Source: Phallusia mammillata (lineage: Eukaryota). From it: DNA of 64,000 nt. The position numbers and the translations under genes are program-made. A model generated the notes under the pieces. The model ran no database searches, had not been told where the DNA came from, and was given only the letters and a program-made list of their open reading frames with translations. Positions 21,809 through 24,141 of the stretch are shown here, in pieces (position 1 is the stretch's first letter; each line of letters opens with the position of its first letter). The stretch spans positions 27,652,001 to 27,716,000 of the forward strand of contig OZ281498.1 in NCBI GenBank assembly GCA_965637545.1. The letters run 5' to 3'.

Positions 21809-22535
21809 GGGTGGAACTGGAAAAGTTGTTGTTTTTTCTTATAGAAAAGCGTGATTAACTATTGCAAACGACAAAAGTTGTATTTGCCTGAACAAGGCAA
21901 CAACGGCCTAAAAATACAGCAAATTATAATCTGTTATTCACGGTTTTGGACTGATAAAAAGTGATTGCTTTTGTGGTAATAATTCCGTTCCCCTTTTTTA
22001 CACGACAACAGTTTTGGTTGATATGTGAGTATGTGACATCTCCGGTTTAAAGCAAGGTTCGGTGTTTTCTTTTACACCAGTGGTTCCCAAACTATGGTAC
22101 AAGAATATAAAAAGAAATTGACAGAAGTTGCAAGAAGCTCAGTATCAGATTATGCTCTGTGCTTTTTGTGTAACAATTGCTTGTTTGTTTGCTCCAGTGT
22201 TTAGTTGTGTGTAAAGCCTTGTTAATGATCTTTCAAATGCTGTTTAATCCTTTTATAATGGTTTTTATTTTGTATTTTAATCTTAACTGACAATTGACAC
22301 ATGTGAATTAGCATCTGGTAAAATTTCCCACTCTTATGAATATTTTATGCACCAATAACCCAAGATTTCATTCTTCAGTTAGAGCTGCTCAGATATTTGT
22401 TTATGATATATATATGTGTATTGCTCAACGTCATTGGTTCTAAATTCATTCACTATACAAGTTTTCTTTCTATAATGGCTAACAATTTAATGTTTTCAAA
22501 ACACAGGTTTTACTATTTTACCGCTGCAGTAAATC

Positions 22536-22769
22536 ATGCTAATTAAAGTTAAGACACTGACAGGAAAAGAAATAGAAATCGACATTGAAGCCACTGACAA
22601 GGTCGAACGAATCAAAGAGCGGGTGGAGGAAAAGGAGGGAATTCCCCCTCCACAACAAAGGCTCATCTTCAGCGGAAAACAAATGAACGACGAAAAAACT
22701 GCGTCTGATTACAAAATTGTCGGCGGATCCGTTTTACATTTGGTTTTGGCTCTACGCGGAGGTTTCTAG
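22536..22769 (+). CDS. NEDD8: NEDD8 ubiquitin-like modifier precursor (intronless CDS)
   Basis: [77 protein letters not shown]; NEDD8-diagnostic N-terminus and LALRGG end (Ala72, not the Arg72 of ubiquitin). Confidence 0.97.
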
Positions 22770-22792
22770 CTCCGACACTCGCTCATCCAATC

Positions 22793-24141
22793 ATGACCAT
22801 CCACTTGCTGCATATTTACGACCGAAACGGAAATTCTTTATTTGCGAAGGAATGGAGCAGAAAAAAGTCTTCGAATCTCACAAAAGTTGAAGAACAAAAA
22901 TTACTTTTTGGGATGATCCATTCAATTAAATCTTTTGTAACAAAGATGTCTCCTAAAGATGGGTAAGATTTTTATCACCAAAATAAACATTTTTTTTTGT
23001 GTAAAAATGAGGTTTTTGGTGTCAGGATGTTTTTTGTTGTATGCAATATATTTACCAAATAATCAGTGGTGGGATTCAACTGGTTCGCACCAGTTCTATA
23101 GAACCGTCTCACAAAATTTTATGAGATCAGCGAACCGGTTAGCATTACTGGTTACTGTCAATGGATTTTTGTAACAGAACTGGCTGAAAAATATGACTTT
23201 TGTGTTAGAACTGACTGAAAATATGACTTTTGTTATAGAACCGGCTGACAAAAAATTGAATCCCACCACTGCATATAATGGAACCAAACTCATTTAAAAC
23301 TTTGTGTTAACACTAGCAATTATTTTTTTCTTTCAGGAAGATTACTTACATTGAAGCAAATGTACAACAAATTGATGTTTTTGTGTTTCAGCAAAGAAGG
23401 TTTCATTAGTTACACAACAAGCCGCTACAAAATTCATTTCTATGAATCGCCAACTGGTTTAAAATTTATTCTCCTCACTGATATCTTCGTGGGAAACATT
23501 CGGGAAACCATGAAGAAGCTCTACAGCTCAGTAAGTTGTTGTTTGTTTAATTGCAAAACCACTTCAATTGCCAATTCAGACTATGTAACCTTGATCAGAT
23601 TACAATGTTACAATGTGCTTCATGTTGCAATATCCTACTTAAACTTATTTAAAAGCTGACAGTTAGGGCTATTAGGGTTGGGGTAAGAGTTTGTAGTTAC
23701 AGTAACATAACAATTTGTTCTCAAATGCCCCTTTAAGGCTTAATATTCACACACACACATCAACATGCTGTATCGTGAGGTGTTTCATACCATGTAAGGA
23801 AAAAACAGATACAGTGGTGTGAATAGTAGACTGTATTTTCAGGGAGCCATGTTATAACATCTGAAGATATATATATATGAAATAGAATAAAGTGTGAAAT
23901 AAAAATCAACCAGCAATGTTTCTTAATCTGAACGTTTGCACCAAAACCCAAGTGCTATTTACAAAGCACAGCAAACAATTAAGTTGGGCTACTAACATAT
24001 AAATTTTTTTTCCAGGTATATGTTGAGTTTGTCGTTCGCAATCCCCTGTGTCCCTTAAATGAACCAATTCGAAGCTCCTTATTTGAAACCAAACTGGAAA
24101 CATTTATGACCGGACTTTCTTTCTTCGAAGACTCAAATTGA
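22793..24141 (+). CDS. TRAPPC1: TRAPP complex subunit 1 (Bet5); 3 exons 22793-22962, 23392-23530, 24016-24141
   Basis: Spliced translation MTIHLLHIYDRNGNSLFAKEWSRKK...EEQKLLFGMIHSIKSFVTKMSPKDG|KEGFISYTTSRYKIHFYESPTGLKFILLTD...LYSS|VYVEFVVRNPLCPLNEPIRSSLFETKLETFMTGLSFFEDSN*; GT-AG, phases consistent. Confidence 0.93.
23064..23271 (+). mobile_element. hAT MITE family A copy (TRAPPC1 intron 1)
   Basis: TIR cagtggtgggattca / tgaatcccaccactg; TSD caaataat / catataat. Confidence 0.85.

What the first reader, a model, noticed from the sequence alone, without database searches (positions are those of the whole stretch)
22500..22990. NEDD8 and TRAPPC1 packed 23 nt apart: overlapping operon or bicistronic mRNA
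Seen: the NEDD8 TAG (22767-22769) is followed by a 23-nt spacer with no AATAAA and no AG, then the out-of-frame TRAPPC1 ATG (22793). The stop codon itself reads tttcTAG| like a splice acceptor; another acceptor (ctgcag| at 22529) lies 6 nt before the NEDD8 ATG; and an AATAAA (22982-22987) lies just inside TRAPPC1 intron 1. Established: ascidians resolve operons by SL trans-splicing with essentially no intercistronic DNA. Inference: one promoter makes either NEDD8 mRNA (first acceptor, with a 3' UTR running over TRAPPC1 exon 1 and intronic polyadenylation) or TRAPPC1 mRNA (splicing onto the NEDD8 stop codon so the NEDD8 CDS acts as outron or intron), or a true bicistronic mRNA translated by re-initiation. 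The intronless NEDD8 CDS also suggests a retrocopy captured in the TRAPPC1 5' region.
Basis: partly seen in the sequence, partly recalled or inferred. Interest (0 to 1): 0.75.

Follow-up and report, generated by a model that had tools for sequence, protein, structure and literature searches.

The report
Sea-squirt NEDD8–TRAPPC1 two-gene operon
In the sea squirt Phallusia mammillata, the NEDD8 and TRAPPC1 genes lie 23 bases apart and appear together on one leader-capped, fully spliced RNA, an arrangement shared by five other tunicates; it is an ordinary ascidian operon, except that the only place to cut the two messages apart is NEDD8's own stop codon.

Summary
An intronless NEDD8 ORF (22536-22769) is followed by a 23-nt spacer with no AG and no AATAAA, then by the out-of-frame TRAPPC1 ATG (22793; three exons, 144 aa, identical to the public P. 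mammillata protein).

RNA assemblies from four studies each hold one contig carrying NEDD8, the spacer and fully spliced TRAPPC1, ending at 24229 behind AATAAA. No intronic polyadenylation near 23000 was seen.

NEDD8>TRAPPC1 adjacency (spacers of 21-86 nt) is kept in five other tunicate taxa, including Clavelina. These spacers have few AGs and no ATG. Only Phallusia has a TAG stop and no AG in the spacer.

Best reading: a conserved Ciona-type spliced-leader operon whose unresolved, processed two-gene RNA accumulates. If it is resolved, the cut must use the AG of the NEDD8 stop codon. That step is inferred, because contigs could not show it. A truly bicistronic mRNA remains possible (about 0.25).

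It is a new member of a known kind, of moderate interest. The scan had already noted other operon candidates elsewhere in this genome, but not this locus.

The parts
21791..22506 (+). Outron, the discarded 5' part of the primary transcript. Its true start is unknown and lies at or upstream of about 21800.
   Evidence: Low-depth RNA contigs cover 21791-22505 (X17) and 21802-22261 (X3), at depth 6-12 against 65-73 for the mRNA contig. They begin inside a repeat, so the transcription start site cannot be read from them.
22505..22506 (+). AG of the spliced-leader trans-splice acceptor in use. The first mRNA base is 22507.
   Evidence: The X6 contig has 20 loose letters before 22505. They read TACGGG, then ATTCTATTTGAATA, and run on into the genomic AG, giving the full 16-nt leader ATTCTATTTGAATAAG (leader sequence from PMC1488885 Table 1). 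The X3 contig starts at 22505 and the X17 contig at 22508.
It was not seen in use.
   Evidence: Sequence. No contig starts at 22530. Both AGs are conserved in relative L001.
22536..22769 (+). NEDD8 coding sequence: single exon, 77 aa, ending LRGG-F then TAG.
22767..22769 (+). NEDD8 stop codon TAG. Its AG is the only AG between the end of NEDD8 and the TRAPPC1 ATG, making it the candidate trans-splice acceptor and poly(A) site.
   Evidence: Sequence. Its use is inferred and was not observed.
22770..22792 (+). 23-nt spacer with no AG, no ATG and no poly(A) signal.
22793..22962 (+). TRAPPC1 exon 1 (coding).
   Evidence: Pfam Sybindin 3e-12. Joint 22962>23392 with GT..AG ends in four of four runs.
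22982..22987 (+). AATAAA inside intron 1, with no evidence of use.
   Evidence: No listed contig extends past 22961 into the intron.
23392..23530 (+). TRAPPC1 exon 2.
   Evidence: Joints 22962>23392 and 23530>24016 in four of four runs.
24016..24229 (+). TRAPPC1 exon 3: coding to the TGA at 24139-24141, then an 88-nt 3' UTR, AATAAA at 24206-24211, and the RNA end at 24229.
   Evidence: The X3 and X6 contigs both end at 24229.

Best explanation
This is a conserved tunicate two-gene operon of the Ciona type.

One primary transcript starts at least 700 nt upstream and receives the 16-nt spliced leader at 22506/22507. It carries the intronless NEDD8 ORF, then TRAPPC1 23 nt later, loses both TRAPPC1 introns, and is polyadenylated at 24229 behind the only well-placed AATAAA. 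This processed two-gene RNA accumulates enough to be the only form assembled in four independent RNA data sets, and it can serve as the NEDD8 message because NEDD8 is its first ORF.

The next step is inferred. A share of transcripts is probably trans-spliced again at the only available AG, that of the NEDD8 stop codon (22768-22769). This would give a TRAPPC1 mRNA with a 39-nt leader (16 nt of spliced leader plus the 23-nt spacer). Under the Ciona rule, poly(A) is added to the G of the downstream acceptor, so any separate NEDD8 mRNA would end at its stop codon with no 3' UTR.

My estimates are about 0.9 for co-transcription, about 0.95 for the leader joining at 22507, and about 0.55 for resolution at the TAG.
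For: Shown:
- In runs X1, X3, X6 and X17 (four studies), one contig covers 22481/22505/22508-22961, 23391-23530 and 24016-24142..24229 with 0-3 mismatches.
- The X6 contig begins with the exact Ciona leader joined at 22507.
- Depth in bins 22637-22803 and 22804-22970 equals the depth of that one contig in all four runs, so no second contig form lies there.
- The unspliced junction at 22506 is not bridged in X3, X6 or X17, yet 22770 is bridged in all four runs. The bridging RNA is therefore more abundant than raw precursor (this reading rests on an inference about assembler behaviour).

Comparative:
- NEDD8>TRAPPC1 lie on the same strand with spacers of 21, 69, 67-70, 85 and 86 nt in L001, L008, L009/L010, L002/L011 and Clavelina lepadiformis.
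- NEDD8 nucleotide identity between taxa is 76-89%, so these are distinct taxa.
- AG is depleted in stop codon plus spacer: 8 observed against 19.1 expected, P 0.004. In L009, L002 and Clavelina the single AG sits behind a pyrimidine-rich stretch, as in a 3' splice site.
- Phallusia alone has a TAG stop, and it alone has no AG in the spacer.

Match to published Ciona operons:
- Same-strand genes are less than 100 nt apart, and poly(A) is added to the G of the downstream acceptor (PMC1488885).
- 16 of 18 upstream cistrons have no AATAAA within 40 nt. Here none occurs in the last 60 nt of NEDD8 or in the spacer.
- 60% of first operon genes are single-exon (PMC2760879).
Against: No leader was seen at 22770, and no poly(A) at 22769. 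The only reads call allowed returned assembled contigs, which clip short dead-end branches and cannot link the two ends of a molecule, so a contig across two genes is not proof of one molecule. The sequence before the TAG (ggaggtttc) is a weak pyrimidine tract inside coding sequence. In Ciona, unresolved dicistronic cDNAs were rare (11 operons among about 680,000 ESTs), whereas here the run-through form is the only one assembled. ATG is absent from the whole spacer in all six taxa, including the part that would be NEDD8 3' UTR (0 observed against 6.3 expected). That fits ribosomes crossing the spacer at least as well as it fits resolution.
Confidence: 0.6

Rival explanations
1. True bicistronic mRNA. 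The leader-capped, spliced, polyadenylated two-gene RNA is the only mature product. NEDD8 is translated from the first ORF, and TRAPPC1 is translated from the same molecule by re-initiation or leaky scanning across the short spacer.
For: The run-through contig is the only form present in four of four data sets. No ATG lies between the NEDD8 start and the TRAPPC1 start except in-frame Met50, in all six taxa, and none lies in any spacer. The boundary RNA is less structured than shuffled sequence (z +1.5), so nothing blocks scanning. NEDD8 has no poly(A) signal. Both start codons share the context aatcATG in Phallusia and L001.
Against: A 77-codon first ORF is long for efficient re-initiation (general knowledge). 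The lack of ATG in the NEDD8 coding sequence is what its amino-acid sequence gives anyway (synonymous shuffles, P 0.5-1.0). AG depletion and splice-site-like spacers in relatives point to an acceptor. In Ciona, SL-bearing full-length ESTs exist for 72% of downstream operon genes. A stop codon 193 nt upstream of an exon junction would normally invite nonsense-mediated decay (general knowledge; inference).
Confidence: 0.25
2. Two overlapping but independent transcripts. TRAPPC1 has its own start site inside or just after NEDD8, or NEDD8 mRNA merely has a 3' UTR that overlaps TRAPPC1 exon 1, and the assembler merged them.
For: Contigs cannot prove a single molecule (warning in the tool output).
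Against: No second contig form exists in the boundary bins in any of the four runs (depth arithmetic). The 23-nt spacer leaves no room for a promoter outside coding sequence. The adjacency is conserved across tunicate orders. Such tight same-strand pairs are operons in Ciona.
Confidence: 0.08
3. NEDD8 mRNA runs over TRAPPC1 exon 1 and ends by polyadenylation inside intron 1, behind AATAAA 22982-22987.
For: The AATAAA is there. NEDD8 lacks a signal of its own.
Against: All four contigs splice 22962>23392, and no listed contig enters 22963-23056. The share of sampled words held by the RNA-like runs (0.75-0.81 of 22450-23050) matches coverage ending at 22961. Relatives with 67-86 nt spacers need no such device. 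Contigs drop rare forms, so a minor isoform is not excluded.
Confidence: 0.07

Closest known systems
Ciona intestinalis spliced-leader-resolved operons without intercistronic DNA (Satou et al. 2006, PMC1488885; Satou et al. 2008, PMC2760879)
   Same: Same 16-nt leader. Same-strand genes less than 100 nt apart. A single-exon first gene. No AATAAA at the end of the upstream gene, with a canonical AATAAA only on the last gene. An RNA spanning both genes exists.
   Different: Here the boundary AG would be the stop codon itself, so the upstream mRNA would have no 3' UTR. Leader addition to the downstream gene was not shown. The unresolved RNA is the form that assembles, whereas dicistronic cDNAs were rare in Ciona.
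Caenorhabditis elegans SL1-type operons with no intercistronic sequence (as cited in PMC1488885)
   Same: The downstream acceptor abuts the upstream 3' end, so making the upstream mRNA and making the downstream mRNA are thought to be mutually exclusive for any one transcript.
   Different: The nematode cases keep AATAAA in the upstream gene, use a different leader, and belong to an unrelated lineage.
Oikopleura dioica operons (23-30 nt intercistronic regions, as cited in PMC1488885)
   Same: Spacer length of a few tens of nucleotides. Upstream genes lack AATAAA.
   Different: A different 40-nt leader. There the spacer lies between the poly(A) site and the acceptor. Here 23 nt is the distance between the two coding sequences, with no AG inside.
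Functional bicistronic animal mRNAs such as Drosophila stoned, and mammalian SNURF-SNRPN and MOCS2 (recalled from memory, not checked here)
   Same: Two unrelated ORFs on one capped, polyadenylated RNA with a short gap.
   Different: Translation of the second ORF from the two-gene RNA was not tested here. Those cases do not involve spliced-leader trans-splicing.

Membership tests
Ciona-type SL-resolved operon | Two or more same-strand genes separated by less than 100 nt | tested here: met
   23 nt between the coding sequences. Operational definition from PMC2760879.
Ciona-type SL-resolved operon | Transcription across the boundary (an RNA spanning both genes) | tested here: met
   One contig spans 22770 in four of four RNA data sets from four studies. 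This is contig-level evidence, not single-molecule evidence.
Ciona-type SL-resolved operon | The downstream gene receives the spliced leader at the boundary | tested here: inconclusive
   No leader-bearing contig at 22770. Assemblers clip such short branches, and no raw reads were available.
Ciona-type SL-resolved operon | Upstream mRNA polyadenylated at the G of the downstream acceptor AG (no intercistronic DNA) | not testable with these tools
   Needs raw reads or 3'-end sequencing. Contigs do not keep poly(A) tips.
Ciona-type SL-resolved operon | No AATAAA within 40 nt upstream of the upstream gene's end (16 of 18 Ciona cases) | tested here: met
   No AATAAA or ATTAAA in the last 60 nt of NEDD8 or in the spacer. 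Of the relatives tested the same way, L001, L002/L011 and Clavelina also have none. L008 and L009/L010 carry an AATAAA overlapping the stop codon.
Ciona-type SL-resolved operon | Uses the single ascidian 16-nt leader ATTCTATTTGAATAAG | tested here: met
   The exact leader sits on the 5' end of the X6 contig, joined at 22507. This was shown for the first gene only.
Functional bicistronic mRNA | A mature capped and polyadenylated RNA carrying both complete ORFs | tested here: inconclusive
   The contig has the leader at its 5' end, both introns removed, and an end 18 nt behind AATAAA. A contig cannot prove that one molecule has all of these.
Functional bicistronic mRNA | The second ORF is translated from the two-gene RNA, and no monocistronic mRNA exists for it | not testable with these tools
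   Needs ribosome profiling, long reads or reporter assays.
Processed retrocopy (NEDD8) | Intronless copy with a poly(A) remnant or target-site duplication, and an intron-bearing parent elsewhere | tested here: not met
   No A-tract follows the stop and no flanking direct repeat is seen. NEDD8 is intronless at this same position in six taxa. A parent copy could not be searched for outside the window.

The most novel reading that the evidence does not exclude
The processed two-gene RNA is itself a working message in a chordate. NEDD8 is translated from it, with the whole TRAPPC1 message acting as its 3' UTR. TRAPPC1 is made either from the same molecule by re-initiation, or from a shorter mRNA created by trans-splicing onto the AG of the NEDD8 stop codon. 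In the second case the stop codon doubles as a splice acceptor, and any separate NEDD8 mRNA has a zero-length 3' UTR. Either way, one nucleotide triplet would decide which of two unrelated housekeeping proteins a transcript yields.
Probability: 0.3. Interest if true: 0.65.

Novelty: new member of a known kind. Interest (0 to 1): 0.38.

Why it matters
Ascidian operons without intercistronic DNA have been known since 2006, but how they are resolved is still open. Satou et al. proposed that upstream and downstream mRNAs are mutually exclusive products of a single transcript. This locus is an extreme and simple test case. It has two small essential genes and a single candidate acceptor that is also a stop codon, and the pair is conserved across tunicate orders with a spacer that shrank from about 86 nt to 23 nt. 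A single TAG-to-TAA change in a reporter would separate resolution by trans-splicing from translation of a bicistronic RNA. There is also a practical point. NEDD8 is missing from the public protein sets of P. mammillata and from the gene calls at this locus in Clavelina, probably because annotation allows only one coding sequence per transcript.

Tried and rejected
1. Looking for the P. mammillata RNA contigs by exact protein look-up failed. NEDD8 returned only a relative's genomic contig, and TRAPPC1 (P0002) is not on record.
2. RNA contigs from Clavelina or the L008 species could not be obtained. The Clavelina NEDD8 is not on record, and the L008 NEDD8 returned only genomic contigs.
3. Ciona TRAPPC1 (P0004) has no contig on record, so Ciona synteny could not be checked. 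The supplements of PMC1488885 are not held, and PMC2860165 is not held.
4. Three marine metagenome contigs with intronless TRAPPC1 (L005-L007) have no NEDD8 in the 187-470 nt available upstream. Their organism is unknown, so they were left out.
5. An ATG-depletion test on the NEDD8 coding sequence was not significant against synonymous shuffles.
6. Searches for a structured RNA element found nothing: no credible Rfam match (one chance hit at E 0.19) and no excess folding.
7. The accession numbers of the relatives' runs appear in no held paper, so L001, L002, L008 and L009 remain unnamed tunicates.
8. A frame-fusion or readthrough protein is rejected. The TRAPPC1 frame relative to NEDD8 differs between taxa (2, 0, 1, 2).
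9. The transcription start cannot be read from the contigs, because the outron contigs begin inside a repeat.

Full report
**What is in the sequence**

The finding's coordinates are all correct.
- An intronless 77-aa ORF runs 22536-22769 and ends LRGG-F-TAG. It matches the ubiquitin family (PF00240, 6e-27). It falls in a 90%-identity cluster whose named members are NEDD8 of vertebrates and insects, and it has the NEDD8-type ...LALRGG tail.
- The next 23 nt (22770-22792) hold no AG, no ATG and no AATAAA or ATTAAA.
- At 22793 a second ORF starts in another frame. With exons 22793-22962, 23392-23530 and 24016-24141 it gives a 144-aa protein.
- All three pieces of that protein match Sybindin (PF04099). 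The whole is identical to P0002, the public Phallusia mammillata TRAPPC1 (UniRef A0A6F9DUT8, CAB3267217.1). This fixes both the organism and the gene model.
- AATAAA lies at 22982-22987 in intron 1, and at 24206-24211 behind the TRAPPC1 stop.
- The window has no N.

**RNA evidence**

Twenty public runs hold the stretch 22450-23050. Eighteen of them hold 0.75-0.81 of its sampled words, which is what coverage from about 22505 to 22961 gives.

I laid four runs from four studies on 20800-25800 (the only reads call allowed). All four were Logan contigs, not raw reads.
- In each run, one contig covers NEDD8, the spacer and TRAPPC1 exon 1. The start is 22481, 22505, 22505 or 22508, and the piece ends at 22961.
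- Each contig then jumps 22962>23392 and 23530>24016 with GT..AG ends.
- X1 ends at 24142, X17 at 24177, and X3 and X6 at 24229, which is 18 nt behind AATAAA.
- The X6 contig has 20 extra letters at its 5' end: TACGGG followed by ATTCTATTTGAATA, running into the genomic AG at 22505-22506. That gives the exact 16-nt ascidian spliced leader ATTCTATTTGAATAAG (PMC1488885 Table 1).
- From memory, the TACGGG in front looks like the end of a template-switching oligo.

Low-depth contigs cover 21791-22505 (depth 6-12, against 65-73 for the mRNA contig in the same runs). These represent the outron.

**What the contigs do and do not show**

Depth in bin 22637-22803 equals the depth of the single long contig in every run (114.8, 72.8, 100.1, 65.6). 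Depth in bin 22804-22970 equals that figure times 158/167. So no other contig form lies on the boundary in these four assemblies: no leader-TRAPPC1 start and no NEDD8 end.

This is not proof of absence. Assemblers clip short dead-end branches, and the tool warns that a contig across two genes does not show one transcript.

One internal comparison helps. The unspliced junction at 22506 is not bridged in X3, X6 or X17, although the outron itself is present in X3 and X17. The 22770 boundary, by contrast, is bridged in all four runs. The RNA crossing 22770 is therefore more abundant than raw precursor, which fits a processed two-gene RNA at appreciable level. This reading rests on an inference about assembler behaviour.

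Nothing supports polyadenylation near 23000. No listed contig enters 22963-23056.

**Comparison with other tunicates**

Exact and near-exact protein look-ups fetched five further taxa:
- L001 (Logan DRR090687)
- L008 (SRR25569782)
- L009/L010 (ERZ25067582, two haplotypes)
- L002/L011 (ERZ25067590, two haplotypes)
- Clavelina lepadiformis (L003/L004, GCA_947623445.1)

NEDD8 nucleotide identity between taxa is 76-89%, so they are distinct taxa.

In every one, an intronless NEDD8 sits directly upstream of TRAPPC1 on the same strand. The spacers are 21, 69, 67-70, 85 and 86 nt.

In Clavelina the next gene is SPC25 on the opposite strand. The same holds in the window, at 24501-25188 (PF06703).

Summed over the six taxa, stop codon plus spacer holds 8 AG against 19.1 expected (P 0.004) and 0 ATG against 6.3 expected (P 0.002).

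In L009, L002 and Clavelina there is exactly one AG, and it lies behind a pyrimidine-rich stretch like a 3' splice site. In L009 it sits one base before the ATG. L001, the closest relative, has TAA followed by caaAG. Phallusia alone has TAG, and it alone has no AG in the spacer.

Phallusia, L001, L002/L011 and Clavelina have no poly(A) signal at the end of NEDD8. L008 and L009/L010 have AATAAA overlapping the stop codon.

**What is known**

In Ciona about a fifth of genes lie in operons, defined as same-strand pairs less than 100 nt apart.
- SL-bearing 5'-full-length ESTs exist for 72% of downstream operon genes.
- 60% of first genes are single-exon (PMC2760879).
- 16 of 18 upstream genes lack AATAAA within 40 nt.
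- The authors argue that each transcript can yield either the upstream or the downstream mRNA, but not both.
- Unresolved dicistronic cDNAs were rare: 11 operons among about 680,000 ESTs.
- A later RNA-seq study found a median intercistronic distance of 1 bp (PMC7986045).
- No held paper combines NEDD8, TRAPPC1 and operon.

**Mechanism**

Shown:
- One leader-capped start at 22507.
- Both ORFs on one spliced contig, with a common 3' end at 24229.
- Conserved gene adjacency across six tunicate taxa.

Inferred: the locus is a Ciona-type operon. Because the only AG at the boundary is in the stop codon, any resolution must trans-splice at 22769/22770. That would give TRAPPC1 a 39-nt leader. If the Ciona rule holds, a separate NEDD8 mRNA would then end at UAG plus poly(A).

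The accumulated two-gene RNA can in any case serve NEDD8, its first ORF. That would explain why NEDD8 needs no poly(A) signal.

The main rival is that the RNA is never resolved and TRAPPC1 is translated by re-initiation or leaky scanning.
- In its favour: only the in-frame Met50 ATG lies between the two starts in all taxa. The spacers have no ATG, even in the part that would be NEDD8 3' UTR. The boundary is unstructured (z +1.5).
- Against it: the first ORF is 77 codons long. The ATG count in the coding sequence is non-significant. The spacers of relatives look like splice sites.

I put co-transcription at about 0.9, resolution at the TAG at about 0.55, and an unresolved functional bicistronic mRNA at about 0.25.

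**Other checks**

- No Rfam family matches.
- The TRAPPC1 frame relative to NEDD8 varies between taxa, so a fusion protein is excluded.
- NEDD8 shows no retrocopy hallmarks, and its intronless state is shared by all six taxa.
- The earlier scan notes supplied the organism name, which I verified. They also record that other operon candidates exist in this genome, but none covers this locus.

**Verdict**

This is a new, conserved member of the known class of ascidian spliced-leader operons. Its boundary is unusually compressed, which makes it a clean test case for how such operons are resolved. Interest is moderate.

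Noticed in passing
window 23059-23276 (TRAPPC1 intron 1): A MITE-like element with 21-nt terminal inverted repeats (90% complementary). The summed depth of RNA contigs over it runs into the thousands in all four runs, with many variant copies and internal deletions, so it belongs to a very high-copy, transcribed repeat family.
   Followed up: partly
window 21640-21807: A GC-rich palindromic repeat with 30-nt arms (97% complementary) and nested arms. 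RNA contigs from other copies map here at high depth in X1. The outron contigs of the NEDD8 unit begin inside its right arm, so the promoter may lie in or next to this element.
   Followed up: partly
window 24501-25188, minus strand: The last exon and 3' UTR of an SPC25/SPCS2 (signal peptidase subunit) gene, convergent with TRAPPC1. About 270 nt separate the two 3' ends. The same NEDD8>TRAPPC1<SPC25 order, followed by a PRUNE/BNIP2-domain gene, is found in Clavelina lepadiformis.
   Followed up: partly
L004:3678-3914 (Clavelina lepadiformis OX392441.1) and the public P. mammillata protein set: The intact NEDD8 ORF upstream of TRAPPC1 has no called gene in the Clavelina record, and its product is not on record. 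The exact P. mammillata NEDD8 protein is likewise absent from NCBI and UniRef, although TRAPPC1 is present. Annotation that allows one coding sequence per transcript probably hides first genes of operons.
   Followed up: partly
L009:2931-3000 and L008:2539-2610: In two relatives the NEDD8 stop codon TAA is embedded in an AATAAA (caaTAAa). In L009 the only AG of the 67-nt spacer lies one base before the TRAPPC1 ATG. The layout of the boundary evolves quickly while the gene pair stays together.
   Followed up: no
L005, L006, L007 (TARA and JGI marine metagenome contigs): Intronless TRAPPC1 genes, 65-70% identical to the Phallusia protein, with no NEDD8 in the short upstream sequence available. 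The organism is unknown and may be a pelagic tunicate or another animal.
   Followed up: no
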